IMG/VR virus record: IMGVR_UViG_3300023199_000204
Span: 248,001-312,000 of that record
Length of the DNA: 64,000 bases
Reading direction: 5' to 3' (one strand)
The notes below the pieces were generated by a model. It was given only the letters and a program-made list of their open reading frames with translations, ran no database searches and was not told the origin of the DNA. The position numbers and the translations under genes are program-made. Shown piece by piece: positions 8,253 through 64,000 of this stretch (its first letter is position 1; each line of letters opens with the position of its first letter).

Positions 8253-8324
8253 AGGGCACGCTCGGGGTAAGCTGGCTGGTCTCCAAAACCGACTGAATGC
8301 TGGGTTCGAGTCCCAGGTGCCCTG
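8253..8324 (+). tRNA. tRNA-Trp(CCA)
   Basis: AGGGCAC/GTGCCCT, loop CT-CCA-AA, TTCGAGT T loop; D arm irregular. Confidence 0.8.
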
Positions 8325-20964: not shown

Positions 20965-22131
20965 ATGAAATATATAATATTAAGTGATCTTCATTTAGGG
21001 CACAAAGGGATCCAGAATAATGGATTTGTATCTTTACTTTCTAATATTCCAGAGGGTGCGGATGGATATGGCAAGAGTAAGTTAGACAGTTTTTCTACAG
21101 CCATAAAAGATTTTTGTGGAGAAGATAAAGCAGTTTTGATTTTAAATGGTGATTTATTAGAGCTTTCATTAGCGACAATGAGAGATGCTCTTGACAGCTT
21201 TTTAGATGTGATTGCTACAATAAAAGACAATGTAAGTAAAATAATATTAATTGTTGGAAATCACGATCATCATATTTGGTCTTTACATTCAGAGTATAGC
21301 AGGTCATTAAATCATTTACTTTCTGGAGATTTGCCAGCAGTGGGGACGGCTTATAGGACAACGATATTTGCTGAGAAAGCACATCTTTTAGATCCGCTTA
21401 TTAAAAAACAAATTGACGAAAACATTGACTTTAAAGTATCATATCCTTCTTTACGGCTCCATTTAAATAATGGAGATGAACCAGTTTATTGTTATATTAC
21501 ACACGGTCATTTATTGAGTGGATTATATAATTTAACTTCAAGAATACTAAAACCTTTTGCTATTGGTAGAGAAACAGAATATACAATTGCCGAAGTTAAT
21601 TCTGCCTTAATTGAGTTTATGTATTGGTCAGCAGGAGAAATGGGCGATGGGATGGGAGTTGATGGGATCCTTGAGGCAATGTACACGGACTTAGAAAAGG
21701 GAAAGAGTTCTAAAATGAAGGAACTTCTTGTTAATTTATCTAATACATTGTTTCCAGATGGAGTTTTATCGTTTGTCCCAGATGTTTTGGAAAGAAAAAT
21801 ATTTAGTTGGCTAGCAGAAAAGATGTCCAAGAAACTATCAAAGGATAGAGATAAGCCCATATCCTCAGTTGATAGATACGCTTCTTTGGAAGATACTAGA
21901 AATTACGTTAATGATTGGACTAACAATGTTGTTGATTTATCACCTCCATATAAAAGAATGATTTTTGTTTCTGGTCATACGCATCGTGCTGACGAGTTTA
22001 ATATTAATGAAACTGTTAAATATTATAACACTGGATCGTGGTTATTAGAGCCAGCCCATCCTGAACCAGAGTCAAGACTCCTTTTTATAGAGGACGGAGA
22101 AGAACTGAAAATTGAGTTTAAGGTAATATAA
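20965..22131 (+). CDS. calcineurin-like metallophosphoesterase
   Basis: SDLHLG, NGDLLE, GNHDH, THGH, GHTH, NTGSW. Confidence 0.9.
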   Translation: MKYIILSDLHLGHKGIQNNGFVSLLSNIPEGADGYGKSKLDSFSTAIKDFCGEDKAVLILNGDLLELSLATMRDALDSFLDVIATIKDNVSKIILIVGNHDHHIWSLHSEYSRSLNHLLSGDLPAVGTAYRTTIFAEKAHLLDPLIKKQIDENIDFKVSYPSLRLHLNNGDEPVYCYITHGHLLSGLYNLTSRILKPFAIGRETEYTIAEVNSALIEFMYWSAGEMGDGMGVDGILEAMYTDLEKGKSSKMKELLVNLSNTLFPDGVLSFVPDVLERKIFSWLAEKMSKKLSKDRDKPISSVDRYASLEDTRNYVNDWTNNVVDLSPPYKRMIFVSGHTHRADEFNINETVKYYNTGSWLLEPAHPEPESRLLFIEDGEELKIEFKVI

Positions 22132-29115: not shown

Positions 29116-29248
29116 GGATGCGTTGAGCAGTGCGGTGAGCTTGGCGGGCTGTGGGGATTGATTAAATGGTAATTTTAATGAGTTCGATTCTCACATTCCC
29201 AAAACCCCGTGGTCTTCGGGCTTGTAGGTTCGATTCCTACCGCATCCA
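29116..29248 (+). tRNA. tRNA-Tyr(GUA) interrupted in the anticodon by a ~50-nt tRNA-like insert
   Basis: GGATGCG/CGCATCC-A, long variable arm with TTCG loop; removing 29153-29202 gives GCGGG-CTGTAAC-CCCGT. Confidence 0.75.
29153..29202 (+). ncRNA. nested minimal tRNA-like element (acceptor + one hairpin + T arm, no anticodon arm)
   Basis: (T)GGGGAT/ATTCCC(A); ATTAA..TTAAT hairpin; TGAG-TTCGATT-CTCA. Confidence 0.7.
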
Positions 29249-31048: not shown

Positions 31049-31195
31049 GCCTCCGTGGTGTTAATGGCTTAGCACACTGGATTTTGCGAAAGACATTTGG
31101 TATGTAGATGTTAGAGGCAACTCTTTGGTCTAAGTGAGTTCGATTCTCACCTTTCGCGTAATCCATGAAGTGTGGGTTCGAATCCTACCGGGGCT
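31049..31195 (+). tRNA. tRNA-Lys(UUU) interrupted in the anticodon by a 73-nt tRNA-like insert
   Basis: GCCTCCG..GTGT/GCAC D arm; removing 31086-31158 gives CTGGA-TTTTTAA-TCCAT; T arm GTGGG-TTCGAAT-CCTAC; 3' acceptor G-run one base short. Confidence 0.72.
31086..31158 (+). ncRNA. nested tRNA-like element without a canonical anticodon loop
   Basis: Perfect GCGAAAG/CTTTCGC+G, D-like ATTT/AGAT, perfect GTGAG-TTCGATT-CTCAC. Confidence 0.8.
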
Positions 31196-32114
31196 ATAAA
31201 ATAGATTAGATAAGAGGATTTAGTTAATATTTATTATTAAAAGGAAAGGAAAAAATGAAAAGTAAAATTTTATCAGTTGTATTGTCAGTTTGTTTGTTAA
31301 TTGGAACGGTATTTGCGACTTCTGCCTGTGGAGACGACTTAGTTGTTAATGGAAAAAACATATAAAACCAAAGGTATTTTTACTCAAGATGAAAAAGACC
31401 CTTGTATTAAATATAGTTTAATTGCTGGAAATGTTGCTTGGGCAATTATATTTTTTGGAACAGCAGTTGCTCCAGTTTATTTTTTTGGATTTTCTTTATG
31501 GGAGCCAGCGAGAGTTAAGTCAGAATGCGAAAAGAAATAAAGTCTCCAAAAATAGGAATGGGAGCAACCATTCAACTTTGGTCAGATAGAATTGCTGGAA
31601 CAATCGTGAGAATTACAAAAACTAAAAAGACAATCTTTATTCAAGAAGATGCGGCATCAAGAATTGATAGAAACGGAATAAGTGAAAGCCAAAGATATGA
31701 ATATACTCCAAATTCTAAAGGAAATGTATATCGTGCTTCTTTAAGAAAATATGGAAGGTTTAGAGTATCAAAAACCAATGAATTAGTTAGTATTAGAGTA
31801 AGACGCAAGTTTTACGATTATTTTTTTTAAGGACATTATGGGAAGATTAAAAGTAGCTAGTTATATTGAAGAGTGGTTGAAATTAGAATGCCCACACTGT
31901 GAAGAGTCAAATTGGCTTCAATCATCATTTGGAGACATATTAGACCCTGATGTTGATGCGATTAGATGCCTATCCTGTAAAGAGTTGTTTCTTGTTTGTG
32001 AAAGAGAGGAATGGGAGAGTGAAGATAATTTATACATAGAAGATGGAGTGACTGATCCGTCTGAAATAAAAGAGTTAGATTTTTATAATGAAGAGATTTG
32101 GAATGATTAAATAA

Positions 32115-32187
32115 GGGTTTGTGGTGTCAATGTAGCATATTCGCCTCTTAAGCGAAAAGGTGATGGGTTCAAGTCCCTCCGAGCCTA
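32115..32187 (+). tRNA. tRNA-Lys(CUU)
   Basis: GGGTTTG/CGAGCCT, TTCGC-CTCTTAA-GCGAA. Confidence 0.85.
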
Positions 32188-40634: not shown

Positions 40635-40717
40635 GCATCCCGTTCCAGACGCCTGTCTTCTAAATAGGTTCCTTAATAGTTTGGGGGAGGTAAGAGGTTC
40701 GAGTCCTCCGGGGTGTT
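40635..40717 (+). tRNA. atypical tRNA-Arg(UCU): no D arm, long variable arm, 8/4 fold
   Basis: GCATCCCG/CGGGGTGT, CCTGT-CTTCTAA-ATAGG, 8-bp V stem, GAGG-TTCGAGT-CCTC. Confidence 0.62.
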
Positions 40718-42241: not shown

Positions 42242-43239
42242 ATGTTAGTGTCTAAAATATTACTAAAGTTTATAGATCTATTTTGTGGAATCGGAGCATT
42301 TCATCAAGCAATTATTAATCTCAAGAATAAATCTATAATTAAAGATTATAAATGCATTCTATCTTGTGATATAGATAAAGATGCAAAGGAAACTTATCAA
42401 AAAAACTTTGATACAGATTTATTTATAAATGATGTTAAAGATGTATCAGACATTAATAATACTTATAGCTTATTATGTGCAGGATTTCCTTGTCAACCGT
42501 TTAGTATTTCAGGAAATAAACGGGGTTTTAATGATGAGAGAGCAGGTCTATTTTTTAAAGTTGTTGATATTGTAAAAAAAACTAATCCTAATTTTATAAT
42601 AATAGAAAACTCGCCTCGTTTAATTAGGAATAGTAGTTATTTCTCAGTCATACAAAATGAATTAGATAATGCTGGATATAATGTTAATGCTGAGATTATT
42701 AATTCTAATAAATTCGCAACTCCTAAAAAAAAGAATCAAAGGTTATATAGTTGCTATCAATAAAAATATTAATATTAATTATATATTTTCCTAAAGGGGA
42801 GGAACATAATTTATCAGTCCATGATATATTAGATTCTTCAGTTCAGAAACACTTAATCGAAAAAAGATATGAAATAATATGGAATAAAACTGTTAATGAA
42901 AACAAAAAATACGGACCTATTAGAATAGGATATGTTTTAAAGAGAAGACAAGGAGAACGCATTTATAGTGTTGACGGGCATTCAATAACCTTAACTGCTT
43001 CGGGAGGAGGCCCTGGTAGAAGTACTGGATTATATTGTGTAGATAAAAGTAAAAACATTATTAGAAGATTATCAGTTAATGAATGTAGGAAATTATCAGG
43101 CTTTAATAATGATTTTATTGTTAATAAAAATAAAAGAGTTGCTTATAAACAATTTGGAAATACTATTGTAGTTCCTGTAGTAGAAGCTATTATAAAAAAT
43201 TTAGTTTTACAGACAAAAGAAGAGAATTGGAGTGACTAG
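42242..43239 (+). pseudogene. dcm: C5 cytosine DNA methyltransferase split by frameshift(s)
   Basis: DLFCGIG, AGFPCQPFS and IENS in the first ORF; RRLSVNECRKLSGF and YKQFGNTIVVPVV in the second; break at an A-tract near 42724. Confidence 0.85.
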
Positions 43240-51906: not shown

Positions 51907-53214
51907 ATGTCAGTAATAGCAATGGAAGTAATGGAGGCGTTTGATCATCCAAATGCTGATTCATTAAGAGTTTATAAATTTATAGCACCAGGGCAAGCAT
52001 CAAAAGAGCGTCCACTTCAAATAGTTGCGAATCTTGAAAATGTGTATGAGGTTGGCGATGTCGTTGCTGTTGCGTTGGTTGGAACTGTTTTAAAAGATGA
52101 AACCACTATCAAAAAAGTAAATCTTCGTGGAGAGTCTTCATACGGAATGGCTTTGGGAAAAGTCGATGCCAAGGTCGGCGAAAATCTTTCTGATAAATAT
52201 GAGGCAGAAGAGATAAAACCTTCAATGGCAGGATTTATTAAATGGCCGAGCATTTCAGGTTTTCATAATATTAGAAAATCATTAGAGAAAATAAAAGAAT
52301 ATGAGGGAGGTGCTTTTACTTATCCAAAACTTGATTACAAATGTAAAGTGAAATTACACGGAACGAATTCGGGTGTTCATTTACATTCTGATGGAACATT
52401 TGCTGTTCAAAGTCGTTCAAGAATATTAACTCCTGAGCACGATAATTTGGGGTTTTATAGATGGACGCAGGATAGGAAAAATCATTTTGAAAAGTGGGCA
52501 AAATCTGCCGGTAGAAATTTAACCGTATTCGGAGAATTTTGTGGAGAGGGAATTCAAAAAGGCGTTGCTGTATCCAAGATAGAGAGGAAGATATTTGTTG
52601 TTTTCGCAGTCCAAGTTGATGAAAATACACTAATAACCGATCCAGAAGAAATCAATGGTTATGTTTTGGAACACGAAGATATAAAAGTTTTACCTTGGTA
52701 TGATGCTAATTTCTTCATTGATTATTCAAATACTGATTTGTTAAGGGCTGTTATTAAGGATATAAATGCTGAGGTAGATAAAGTAGAAAAAGAAGACCCT
52801 TGGGTAAAAGAAGTTTTTGGAGTGAGTGGTATAGGCGAAGGGTTAGTTTTTTATCCTTATAAAGAATATGATAGGGATAGAATATCTTTATTAATGTTTA
52901 AAGCGAAAGGAGAGAAGCATCAGGTTGCTGTTCAAAATAAGCCAGTCCAACTAGATCCAGAAGTATTAAATTCAATTAATGAGTTCTCTGATAAATTCAT
53001 TACAGAGGCAAGACTTGAACAAGGAGTTGCTGAAGGTTGTGATGGCAAGTTGGAAATGAAAATGATGGGTAAGTTTATTAAATGGATTATGTCTGATGTT
53101 AATAAAGAATCAAAAGACGAATTGGAAGCTTCGGGACTTAAATGGAAACAAGTAGGAAAAGAAGTTTCAAGTCGAGCCAGAAATTGGTATAAACAAAAGG
53201 TGGAAGAAATATAA
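51907..53214 (+). CDS. Rnl2-type ATP-dependent RNA ligase with N-terminal tRNA-binding OB-fold
   Basis: N-terminal HPNADSL..VGDVVAVALVG..LRGESSYGM (PheT/Trbp111-like); KLHGTN motif I, FGEF, GEGLV, FKAK, ITEARL. Confidence 0.85.
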   Translation: MSVIAMEVMEAFDHPNADSLRVYKFIAPGQASKERPLQIVANLENVYEVGDVVAVALVGTVLKDETTIKKVNLRGESSYGMALGKVDAKVGENLSDKYEAEEIKPSMAGFIKWPSISGFHNIRKSLEKIKEYEGGAFTYPKLDYKCKVKLHGTNSGVHLHSDGTFAVQSRSRILTPEHDNLGFYRWTQDRKNHFEKWAKSAGRNLTVFGEFCGEGIQKGVAVSKIERKIFVVFAVQVDENTLITDPEEINGYVLEHEDIKVLPWYDANFFIDYSNTDLLRAVIKDINAEVDKVEKEDPWVKEVFGVSGIGEGLVFYPYKEYDRDRISLLMFKAKGEKHQVAVQNKPVQLDPEVLNSINEFSDKFITEARLEQGVAEGCDGKLEMKMMGKFIKWIMSDVNKESKDELEASGLKWKQVGKEVSSRARNWYKQKVEEI

Positions 53215-63693: not shown

Positions 63694-64000
63694 GGGGACG
63701 AAATGGATTCGACAGAGGCGACAAAGATAAATAAAGCAAGTAAGGGAATGTCTATTTTCTCTTTGAAAAATATAGGCAAAAATAAGTAACGAAAATTACG
63801 CACTTGCTGCCTAATTAGGTAGCACATCTGAAGTTTTCTCTCACTCGTGACGGAACTTCAAGATGTCAAATGAACGAGGTAATAATTATTCTTTTAGCGA
63901 TTGGGAATAATTATGAAATTTTAATTGCTTCGTAATTTAGTAGCTTGTTTATGGGCGACTTTATTATTAAATTAAATCATAAACTAAACTTGTAGATGTC
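63694..64000 (+). ncRNA. ssrA: tmRNA, 3' end truncated by the window
   Basis: 5' GGGGACGAAATGGATTCGACAG; internal tag ORF 63776-63814 reading AKISNENYALAA*. Confidence 0.9.

What the first reader, a model, noticed from the sequence alone, without database searches (positions are those of the whole stretch)
31049..31195. tRNA nested inside a tRNA: Lys(UUU) split at anticodon 35/36 by a complete 73-nt tRNA-like element
Seen: the outer tRNA has normal D and T arms, but its anticodon loop holds an insert (31086-31158). The insert has its own perfect 7-bp acceptor stem, a discriminator G, a D-like hairpin and a perfect T arm, but no canonical anticodon loop. Cutting exactly at the insert's +1 and after its discriminator restores a 7-nt TT-TTT-AA loop. 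It has no group I core and no bulge-helix-bulge. Established: RNase P cleavage leaves a 3'-OH on the upstream piece and RNase Z leaves a 5'-P on the downstream piece, which are the ends Rnl2-type ligases join. tRNA-Lys(UUU) is the target of PrrC and PARIS AriB. Inference: a new intron type, a tRNA-mimic excised by host tRNA-processing enzymes with exons joined by the phage ligase. It could also be a decoy, or a way to keep the gene or precursor invisible to anticodon-directed nucleases and integrases. The intact Lys(CUU) gene nearby has no insert.
Basis: partly seen in the sequence, partly recalled or inferred. Interest (0 to 1): 0.92.

Follow-up and report, generated by a model that had tools for sequence, protein, structure and literature searches.

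The report
tRNA-shaped introns in phage tRNAs
Two tRNA genes of a 316-kb phage (Lys and Tyr) are each interrupted inside the anticodon by a small RNA shaped like a tRNA, a little-known kind of phage intron whose ends here sit where the cell's ordinary tRNA-trimming enzymes would cut, which suggests a testable new splicing route.

Summary
Window 31049-31196 is a tRNA gene split by a 73-nt insert (31086-31158). The insert has a perfect 7-bp acceptor stem, a perfect T arm and a cloverleaf fold whose anticodon arm ends in a GCAA tetraloop. Removing it gives a tRNA-Lys(UUU).

I found a second case 1.9 kb upstream. A class II tRNA-Tyr(GUA) at 29116-29248 carries a 49-51-nt relative of the insert at the same anticodon position (35/36), with an identical 16-nt T arm.

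It is not a wholly new class. Devoto et al. 2019 reported "enigmatic" conserved introns in Lak megaphage tRNAs, one of which "may itself encode a tRNA". Lak-type introns also occur in other large viral contigs. They differ in having a 5' hairpin plus an A-rich linker and in sitting at 36/37. Here the tRNA mimic is flush with both exons.

The RNase P + RNase Z + ligase model fits in several ways:
- the flush ends of the Lys intron;
- no phage tRNA gene encodes CCA;
- the phage encodes an Rnl2-type ligase fused to a tRNA-binding domain;
- AAA is the phage's most used codon.

The model is untested. It is off by 1 nt for the Tyr intron, and it cannot explain the 5' splice site of Lak-type introns.

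The parts
31049..31085 (+). 5' exon of tRNA-Lys(UUU): acceptor 5' strand, D arm, anticodon-stem 5' strand, loop positions 32-35 (TTTT)
   Evidence: the spliced sequence is called tRNA-Lys(ttt) by ARAGORN
31086..31158 (+). 73-nt tRNA-shaped intron 1: 7-bp acceptor stem, 4-bp D-like hairpin with GG in its loop, extended third arm capped by GCAA, perfect T arm, discriminator G
   Evidence: cloverleaf minimum-free-energy fold, z = -3.67; not called a tRNA by ARAGORN or Rfam
31159..31196 (+). 3' exon of tRNA-Lys(UUU): loop positions 36-38 (TAA), anticodon-stem 3' strand, variable loop, T arm, acceptor 3' strand, discriminator A; no encoded CCA
29116..29152 (+). 5' exon of a class II tRNA, read as Tyr(GUA): perfect acceptor 5' strand, D arm, anticodon-stem 5' strand, loop CTGT
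29153..29202 (+). tRNA-shaped intron 2 (49-51 nt; the 3' end is uncertain by 1 nt): acceptor stem, one D-like hairpin with a TGGTA loop, T arm sharing the 16-mer TGAGTTCGATTCTCAC with intron 1; no third arm
29203..29248 (+). 3' exon of tRNA-Tyr(GUA): loop AAC, anticodon-stem 3' strand, 13-nt variable arm with a TTCG loop, T arm, acceptor 3' strand, discriminator A
   Evidence: the 29153-29202 excision gives Tyr(gta), 83 nt, with a 5-bp stem and a 7-nt loop
51907..53214 (+). RNA ligase, Rnl2-type nucleotidyltransferase with an N-terminal tRNA-binding OB domain; candidate exon-sealing enzyme
   Evidence: PF09414 + PF01588; T4 Rnl2 2hvq; PheRS beta B2 domain; phrog_548, E 1.6e-53
32115..32187 (+). 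intact tRNA-Lys(CUU), no insert; comparison gene

Best explanation
Two phage tRNA genes, Lys(UUU) and Tyr(GUA), are each interrupted between anticodon positions 35 and 36. The inserts belong to one family of small introns that fold like a tRNA but have no anticodon loop.

Proposed route:
1. Each gene is transcribed as one precursor.
2. The host's RNase P cuts at the 5' end of the inner tRNA mimic, leaving a 3'-OH on the 5' exon.
3. RNase Z cuts after the mimic's discriminator, leaving a 5'-phosphate on the 3' exon.
4. The two exon halves stay held together by the outer acceptor and anticodon stems.
5. The phage's tRNA-binding Rnl2-type ligase seals them, with no end-healing step needed.
6. The intron is released as a free tRNA-like RNA.

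Shown: the anatomy, the second copy, the ligase gene, and the CCA-less tRNA genes. Inferred: transcription as one unit, both cleavages, ligation, and any function of the released RNA.
For: - Both ends of the Lys intron coincide with the +1 and post-discriminator positions of a perfect acceptor/T-arm helix. The excision leaves a canonical 7-nt loop with U33 and A37.
- A second, related intron sits at the same 35/36 position in another isotype. This argues for a site-specific, tolerated element rather than random damage.
- The nucleotide 5' of the proposed 5' cut is U in both introns, and none of about 30 phage tRNA genes encodes CCA. RNase Z-type 3' maturation is therefore the expected route for this phage's tRNAs.
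- The phage encodes an Rnl2-type ligase fused to a tRNA-binding domain. By established enzymology, RNase P and RNase Z leave 3'-OH and 5'-phosphate ends, which this ligase class joins.
- AAA is the most used codon (77 per 1000) and Tyr codons total 47 per 1000. No other Lys(UUU) or Tyr gene lies in the window, so these genes are probably needed.
- In published Lak introns and in L267/L283, the 3' splice site also lies 0-1 nt after the discriminator of an inner tRNA-like helix, and intron-less alleles exist.
- Acceptor sequences differ between family members while pairing is kept.
Against: - There are no RNA data.
- Tyr intron: with canonical numbering (U29152 = +1, A29202 = 73), flush cuts leave a 6-nt loop. 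A canonical Tyr loop needs the 5' cut one nucleotide inside the helix, at 29152|29153. If G29153 is taken as +1 instead, the loop has 8 nt.
- In Lak-type relatives the 5' splice site is 25-30 nt upstream of the inner +1. RNase P cannot define it there, which suggests another nuclease may act in the whole family.
- L039 has 3 extra nucleotides after the discriminator.
- Leader and trailer of the inner mimic are closed by the outer anticodon stem (a 4x4 internal loop). From my own knowledge of these enzymes, such pairing can hinder RNase P and RNase Z.
- Rnl2 ligases are common in jumbo phages for tRNA repair.
- The outer Lys acceptor stem has a C.C mismatch.
- No close relative or intron-less allele was found.
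Confidence: 0.42

Rival explanations
1. The inserts are true spliced introns, but a different endonuclease cuts them. It could be phage- or host-encoded and would either measure from the outer tRNA body or recognise the intron. The tRNA-like fold would serve another purpose, such as stability, mobility, or function as a separate small RNA. A ligase then joins the exons.
For: - Lak-type relatives have their 5' splice site next to a conserved small hairpin with a purine-rich loop, far from the inner +1.
- There is a 1-nt misfit in the Tyr intron and 3 extra nucleotides in L039.
- Splice positions are fixed relative to the outer anticodon: 35/36 here and 36/37 in the Lak type.
Against: - No candidate endonuclease was found in the window.
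- There is no bulge-helix-bulge motif.
- The exact flush fit of the Lys intron to both tRNA-processing sites would be a coincidence.
- No kinase or other recognised end-healing gene was seen in the window. The only phosphoesterase-type hits (20965-22131, 1028-2809) have no assigned role.
Confidence: 0.25
2. The inserts are not spliced. A mobile tRNA-like element inserted into two tRNA genes and inactivated them, so the genes are pseudogenes.
For: - The outer Lys gene has acceptor and anticodon-stem mismatches.
- The Tyr gene cannot be restored to a perfect loop with flush cuts.
- Two copies share a 16-mer, as expected for a recently spread element.
Against: - Both insertions are at the same anticodon position, and excision restores canonical loops.
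- Invariant tRNA features of both outer genes are intact (U8, GG in the D loop, T loop).
- These are the only candidate Lys(UUU) and Tyr genes in a window that holds about 30 tRNAs, while AAA is the top codon.
- Lak introns are conserved across cohorts in otherwise intact genes.
- There is no target-site duplication.
Confidence: 0.12
3. The unspliced two-elbow RNA is itself the functional product. It could be a decoy or sponge for anticodon nucleases or other tRNA-binding defence proteins, or a source of regulated tRNA halves.
For: - tRNA-Lys and tRNA-Tyr are known targets of anticodon or tRNA nucleases (PrrC and PARIS from my own knowledge; Septu cleaving tRNA-Tyr is stated in the abstract of PMC13096335 listed).
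- An abundant unrelated family (L014, L038, L107) has an acceptor-less tRNA body fused to the anticodon stem. That body cannot be an RNase P/Z substrate.
Against: - The perfect inner acceptor stem with a single-stranded discriminator is what processing enzymes need, not what a decoy needs.
- The anticodon that nucleases recognise is disrupted.
- There is no direct evidence.
Confidence: 0.1
4. Assembly artefact or chimeric contig.
For: The contig is a metagenome assembly and the reads were not available here.
Against: - Two independent loci show precise nesting.
- The inner sequence is not a copy of any other tRNA in the window.
- Analogous nested genes occur in independently assembled and curated genomes.
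Confidence: 0.03

Closest known systems
Conserved 'enigmatic' tRNA introns of Lak megaphages (Devoto et al. 2019, PMC6784885), and the same type in IMG/VR contigs L267 and L283
   Same: - A short non-group-I insert in the anticodon loop of a huge-phage tRNA gene.
- The insert contains a tRNA-like acceptor/T-arm helix whose discriminator lies 0-1 nt from the 3' splice site.
- Several isotypes are affected in one genome, including Tyr and Lys.
- No Rfam family matches.
   Different: - Lak-type introns are 80-115 nt and start with a short hairpin plus an A-rich linker before the tRNA-like part.
- They sit after position 36.
- The window's introns are 49-73 nt, consist of the tRNA mimic only, are flush with both exons, and sit at 35/36.
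tRNA-like small RNAs released by RNase P and RNase Z (mascRNA from MALAT1; the tRNA punctuation model)
   Same: A cloverleaf mimic without a decoding anticodon loop, embedded in a longer transcript and expected to be cut out at its +1 and post-discriminator positions.
   Different: Those systems are eukaryotic or mitochondrial, and their flanking RNAs are not re-joined. Here the flanks must be ligated to make a working tRNA.
Phage T4 tRNA-Lys anticodon-loop repair (PrrC cleavage, Pnkp healing, Rnl1 sealing)
   Same: A phage ligase seals a break in the anticodon loop of tRNA-Lys(UUU), with the halves held together by the tRNA body.
   Different: - In T4 the break is made by a host defence nuclease, carries cyclic-phosphate and 5'-OH ends, and needs healing.
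- No sequence is removed in T4.
- The ligase here is Rnl2-type with a tRNA-binding OB domain, not Rnl1.
Archaeal/eukaryal bulge-helix-bulge tRNA introns, and bacterial group I introns in tRNA anticodon loops
   Same: An intervening sequence in the anticodon loop of a tRNA gene.
   Different: - There is no bulge-helix-bulge geometry and no group I core.
- The size is far below that of group I introns.
- The position is 35/36 rather than 37/38 or 34/35.

Membership tests
Lak-type phage tRNA intron (Devoto 2019) | Insert in the anticodon loop of a phage tRNA gene; excision restores a canonical tRNA | tested here: met
Lak-type phage tRNA intron (Devoto 2019) | tRNA-like acceptor/T-arm helix whose discriminator abuts the 3' splice site (0-1 nt) | tested here: met
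Lak-type phage tRNA intron (Devoto 2019) | 5' short hairpin plus A-rich linker between the 5' splice site and the tRNA-like part | tested here: not met
   Both window introns start directly with the acceptor stem. All Lak, L267 and L283 introns have the hairpin and linker.
Lak-type phage tRNA intron (Devoto 2019) | Splice position after anticodon nucleotide 36 | tested here: not met
   The Tyr case requires 35/36: a class II tRNA with A73 and no G-1 excludes His. The Lys case is read as 35/36 by analogy and by the flush ends.
Canonical tRNA (inner element) | Recognised by tRNA models; 7-nt anticodon loop with U33 | tested here: not met
   ARAGORN finds nothing in the insert. There is no Rfam tRNA hit at E <= 10. 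The third arm ends in a GCAA tetraloop, and intron 2 has no third arm.
RNase P / RNase Z substrate (tRNA-like minihelix) | About 12 stacked base pairs of acceptor plus T stem, T loop, unpaired discriminator, no CCA after it | tested here: met
   Intron 1 has 7+5 perfect pairs, discriminator G, then TAA. Intron 2 has 7 (one G.U) + 4 pairs, discriminator A, then AA.
RNase P / RNase Z substrate (tRNA-like minihelix) | Actually cleaved by these enzymes at those sites | not testable with these tools
   Needs in vitro processing or RNA sequencing.
Group I intron | Conserved catalytic core (P3-P8), usually more than 200 nt | tested here: not met
   No Rfam intron match at E <= 10; lengths are 73 and about 50 nt.
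Bulge-helix-bulge intron (EndA type) | Two 3-nt bulges carrying the splice sites, separated by a 4-bp helix | tested here: not met
   The splice sites face each other across a symmetric 4x4 internal loop between the outer anticodon stem and the inner acceptor stem.
Rnl2-type RNA ligase (ORF 51907-53214) | Nucleotidyltransferase domain homologous to T4 Rnl2 | tested here: met
   PF09414 E 2.4e-13; 2hvq E 1.2e-4 over residues 143-401; phrog_548 E 1.6e-53. Catalytic residues were not inspected.

The most novel reading that the evidence does not exclude
These are a minimal form of a class of phage introns spliced without any dedicated endonuclease or ribozyme. The intron mimics a tRNA, so the universal tRNA end-processing enzymes RNase P and RNase Z excise it, and a phage Rnl2-type ligase joins the exons. 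That would be a third mechanistic route of tRNA splicing, alongside self-splicing group I introns and EndA/Sen-type protein splicing. It would make two heavily used phage tRNAs depend on a phage-encoded ligase.
Probability: 0.35. Interest if true: 0.9.

Novelty: new variant of a known kind. Interest (0 to 1): 0.62.

Why it matters
tRNA-like introns in huge-phage tRNA genes have been on record since 2019 as unexplained, and I found no later paper that gives a mechanism. The two introns here are the simplest form seen so far. They consist of nothing but the tRNA mimic, flush with both exons, so they turn a vague curiosity into a sharp hypothesis that can be tested in vitro with three purified components.

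If the hypothesis holds:
- It would add a new way of splicing RNA in bacteria and phages.
- It would give a natural function to the pairing of phage RNA ligases with tRNA arrays beyond damage repair.
- It would mean that standard tRNA finders miss functional tRNAs, including those for the most used codons, in large phages.

If it fails, the family still needs an explanation, and the Lak-type 5' hairpin points to an unknown nuclease.

Tried and rejected
Searches for relatives and alleles:
- The 1-kb region has no match in the INPHARED phage records.
- The exact inner 3' end occurs in IMG/VR only in the source contig.
- The neighbouring 101-aa ORF brought 7 distant loci with no tRNAs.
- The ligase has no close relative in IMG/VR.
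- No intron-less Lys allele was found in IMG/VR in any of the three registers.
- The genome scan with the inner 3' end hit two DPANN archaeal tRNA-His genes, judged coincidental.
- Scans for an inner T arm closely followed by an outer T arm found no further flush-type case (screened). They returned Lak-type and other odd tRNAs.
- Only 2.7 kb upstream of the window could be fetched, and it holds no tRNA.

Other methods tried:
- Brute-force splice enumeration with ARAGORN was too permissive to fix boundaries.
- A loose structural screen for nested modules gave mostly false positives.
- The promoter/terminator scan was uninformative.
- Sequence similarity to other window tRNAs did not settle Lys against Gln or Thr.

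Readings rejected:
- Group I intron and bulge-helix-bulge intron.
- Integrase att site: there is no repeat of the tRNA 3' half.
- His for the second gene: it has a class II variable arm, A73 and no G-1.

Full report
**What is there.** The window is part of IMG/VR contig IMGVR_UViG_3300023199_000204, which is 316 kb with 30% G+C. The window corresponds to contig positions 248001-312000. It carries about 30 tRNA genes and a tmRNA, all on the + strand and interspersed with small ORFs.

At 31049-31196 the sequence reads as the first-stage reader said. A tRNA 5' half (acceptor strand, U8, D arm with GG, anticodon-stem strand, then TTTT) is followed by a 73-nt insert. After the insert come TAA, the other anticodon-stem strand, a 5-nt variable loop, a T arm with loop TTCGAAT, the acceptor strand and discriminator A. 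With the insert removed at 31085|31086 and 31158|31159, ARAGORN calls tRNA-Lys(ttt).

The outer gene is not flawless. The acceptor stem has G1.U72, a C2.C71 mismatch and U4.G69, and the top pair of the anticodon stem is C.U.

**The insert.** The insert has 7 of 7 Watson-Crick acceptor pairs, discriminator G, and a 5 of 5 T stem with loop TTCGATT. Its minimum-free-energy fold is a cloverleaf whose D-like arm has GG in the loop. The third arm is a 4+4-bp stem with an internal loop capped by GCAA (-24.1 kcal/mol, z = -3.67, 0 of 200 shuffles as stable). Neither ARAGORN nor the Rfam tRNA model accepts it as a tRNA, and no Rfam family matches the region at E <= 10. It is a tRNA mimic, not a tRNA.

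**A second case.** ARAGORN in intron mode flagged 29116-29248, directly after tRNA-Cys. This is a tRNA with a perfect acceptor stem, a D arm, a 13-nt variable arm closed by a TTCG loop, and discriminator A. It has no G-1. That makes it a class II tRNA that can only be Tyr given the loop letters CTGT...AA.

Its anticodon loop holds a 49-51-nt insert with an acceptor stem, one D-like hairpin (loop TGGTA, as in intron 1) and a T arm. The T arm shares the 16-mer TGAGTTCGATTCTCAC with intron 1. The 15-mer core occurs exactly only at these two places in the window. With up to 2 mismatches allowed there are 5 matches against 0.06 expected. Intron 2 looks like intron 1 without the third arm.

Both inserts interrupt the anticodon between positions 35 and 36.

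**Registers.** For the Lys gene, cuts shifted by -1, 0 or +1 give Thr(UGU), Lys(UUU) or Gln(UUG), all with canonical loops. ARAGORN's intron heuristic gives Ala(UGC) with a shifted stem. I favour Lys for four reasons:
- The flush cuts give it.
- The Tyr gene fixes the family's position at 35/36.
- Thr(UGU) and Ala(UGC) already exist intact in the window.
- AAA is the most used codon in 28 long ORFs (77 per 1000, against 13.5 for CAA), while the window otherwise has only Lys(CUU).

Sequence similarity to other tRNAs did not decide the matter.

For the Tyr gene there is a 1-nt problem. With canonical numbering of the inner helix (U29152 = +1, A29202 = 73), flush cuts leave a 6-nt loop. A canonical 7-nt loop (CTGTAAC on a 5-bp stem) needs cuts at 29152|29153 and 29202|29203. 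Taking G29153 as +1 and A29201 as discriminator gives an 8-nt loop or a bulged stem.

**Context.** None of the phage tRNA genes encodes CCA. The nucleotide 5' of the proposed 5' cut is U in both introns. ORF 51907-53214 combines a tRNA-binding OB domain with an Rnl2-type ligase domain:
- The OB domain is PF01588, and residues 3-93 resemble the PheRS beta B2 domain.
- The ligase domain matches PF09414, T4 Rnl2 structure 2hvq over residues 143-401, and phrog_548 at E 1.6e-53 over its full length.

I saw no kinase, RtcB, RNase Z or splicing endonuclease among the 30 largest ORFs of the window. The rest of the contig was not available.

**Prior art.** Devoto et al. (Nat Microbiol 2019, PMC6784885; preprint 10.1101/356790) reported that Lak megaphages have tRNAs with highly conserved, 'enigmatic' introns in Tyr, Phe, Thr and Gly genes. 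They noted that the Thr intron 'itself may encode a tRNA', and that intron-less alleles exist and shift the true boundary by one nucleotide from the tRNAscan prediction. They also suggested such introns may be common in large phages. No mechanism was offered.

Their Table S6 shows a common plan for all four introns. Directly after the 5' splice site comes a short hairpin, then an A-rich linker, then a tRNA-like part with a 7-8-bp acceptor stem and a T arm. The discriminator lies 0-1 nt before the 3' exon. With the 1-nt offset, the Thr gene gives the canonical loop CTTGTAA, and the intron ends exactly after the inner discriminator.

I found the same plan in other large viral contigs: L267 (235 kb; Tyr, Thr, Lys) and L283 (99 kb; Ala, Tyr, Thr). 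All sit after position 36, and their acceptor sequences differ while pairing is kept.

Seven further literature searches found no paper proposing or testing a splicing mechanism, and an eighth returned only the two Devoto papers. Two recent jumbo-phage papers discuss only group I introns or list introns among mobile elements.

**How it most likely works.** Established enzymology says RNase P leaves a 3'-OH on the leader, RNase Z leaves a 5'-phosphate on the trailer, and Rnl-family ligases join exactly such ends. The flush Lys intron therefore fits a three-enzyme route with no healing step. The CCA-less tRNA set makes RNase Z the expected 3' maturase, and the ligase has a tRNA-binding domain. 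I put this at about 0.4.

Points against the route:
- The 1-nt misfit in Tyr.
- The closed 4x4 internal loop around the cut sites.
- Rnl2 ligases are common repair genes in jumbo phages.
- RNase P cannot create the 5' splice site of the Lak-type relatives, which lies 25-30 nt upstream of the inner +1. A family-wide mechanism may therefore use another nuclease at the 5' site, with RNase Z or a similar enzyme at the 3' site.

Rival explanations are an unknown dedicated endonuclease (0.25), inactivating insertion of a mobile tRNA-like element (0.12), a functional unspliced decoy (0.10) and mis-assembly (0.03).

**Comparison and novelty.** The element is neither a group I intron nor a bulge-helix-bulge intron. 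It shares two defining features with Lak-type introns: an anticodon-loop insert, and a tRNA-like helix abutting the 3' splice site. It fails two others: it has no 5' hairpin and linker, and it sits at 35/36 rather than 36/37.

I therefore file it as a new variant of a known but unexplained kind. It works like mascRNA-type excision combined with T4-type anticodon-loop sealing, but I know of no system that does both.

Among about 370 fetched loci, only the two window genes are of the flush type.

**Limits.** There are no reads, no RNA data, no close relatives and no intron-less allele.

Noticed in passing
window 40635-40717 (+): tRNA-Arg(UCU)-like gene with a good acceptor stem, anticodon arm and T arm. 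It has only about 8 nt where the D arm should be and a 24-nt region between the anticodon and T arms. ARAGORN and Rfam both miss it.
   Followed up: partly
window 8253-8324 (+): tRNA-Trp(CCA) with an unusual D arm and an A1-U72 pair. ARAGORN and Rfam (gathering threshold) both miss it.
   Followed up: partly
window 63694-64000 (+): Phage-encoded tmRNA (Rfam 82 bits), cut off by the window end.
   Followed up: no
window 42242-42763 and 42751-43239 (+): A C5 cytosine DNA methylase is split over two overlapping ORFs that hold the N-terminal and C-terminal halves of PF00145. This could be a frameshift, a sequencing error or a programmed event.
   Followed up: no
L014, L015, L023, L024, L038, L107 and more than 30 other IMG/VR loci (e.g. 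L038:3580-3800, - strand): An abundant family of complete tRNA genes whose anticodon stem continues, through a 2x2 internal loop, into a 6-bp helix. That helix carries an acceptor-less, circularly permuted tRNA body (variable loop, T arm, linker, D arm). It is a different kind of 'tRNA in a tRNA' and cannot be an RNase P/Z substrate.
   Followed up: partly
L267:2224-5159 and L283:1453-8250: Two large viral contigs each carry three Lak-type tRNA-like introns (L267: Tyr, Thr, Lys; L283: Ala, Tyr, Thr). All lie after position 36 and start with a short hairpin with a purine-rich loop. L283 also has a 208-nt intron in a tRNA-Tyr.
   Followed up: partly
L039:447-569: tRNA-Asn(GUU) with a 49-nt anticodon-loop insert. 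It starts flush (CTGT|GGG) like the window's Tyr intron and has a similar T arm, but it has a weaker acceptor stem and 3 extra nucleotides before the 3' exon.
   Followed up: partly
L011, L012, L020, L035, L062, L074, L117: A conserved element of about 70 nt lies directly downstream of tRNA-Asp/Glu genes in many viral contigs. It contains a T-arm-like hairpin and ends in GATTGATTATAGTGTAAT. It could be an attachment site or a small RNA.
   Followed up: no
L102:2880-3094 (- strand): tRNA-Leu(UAA) with a 51-nt insert that appears to lie between positions 32 and 33 and has no convincing tRNA-like fold. Short non-group-I inserts in phage tRNA anticodon loops seem to be diverse.
   Followed up: partly
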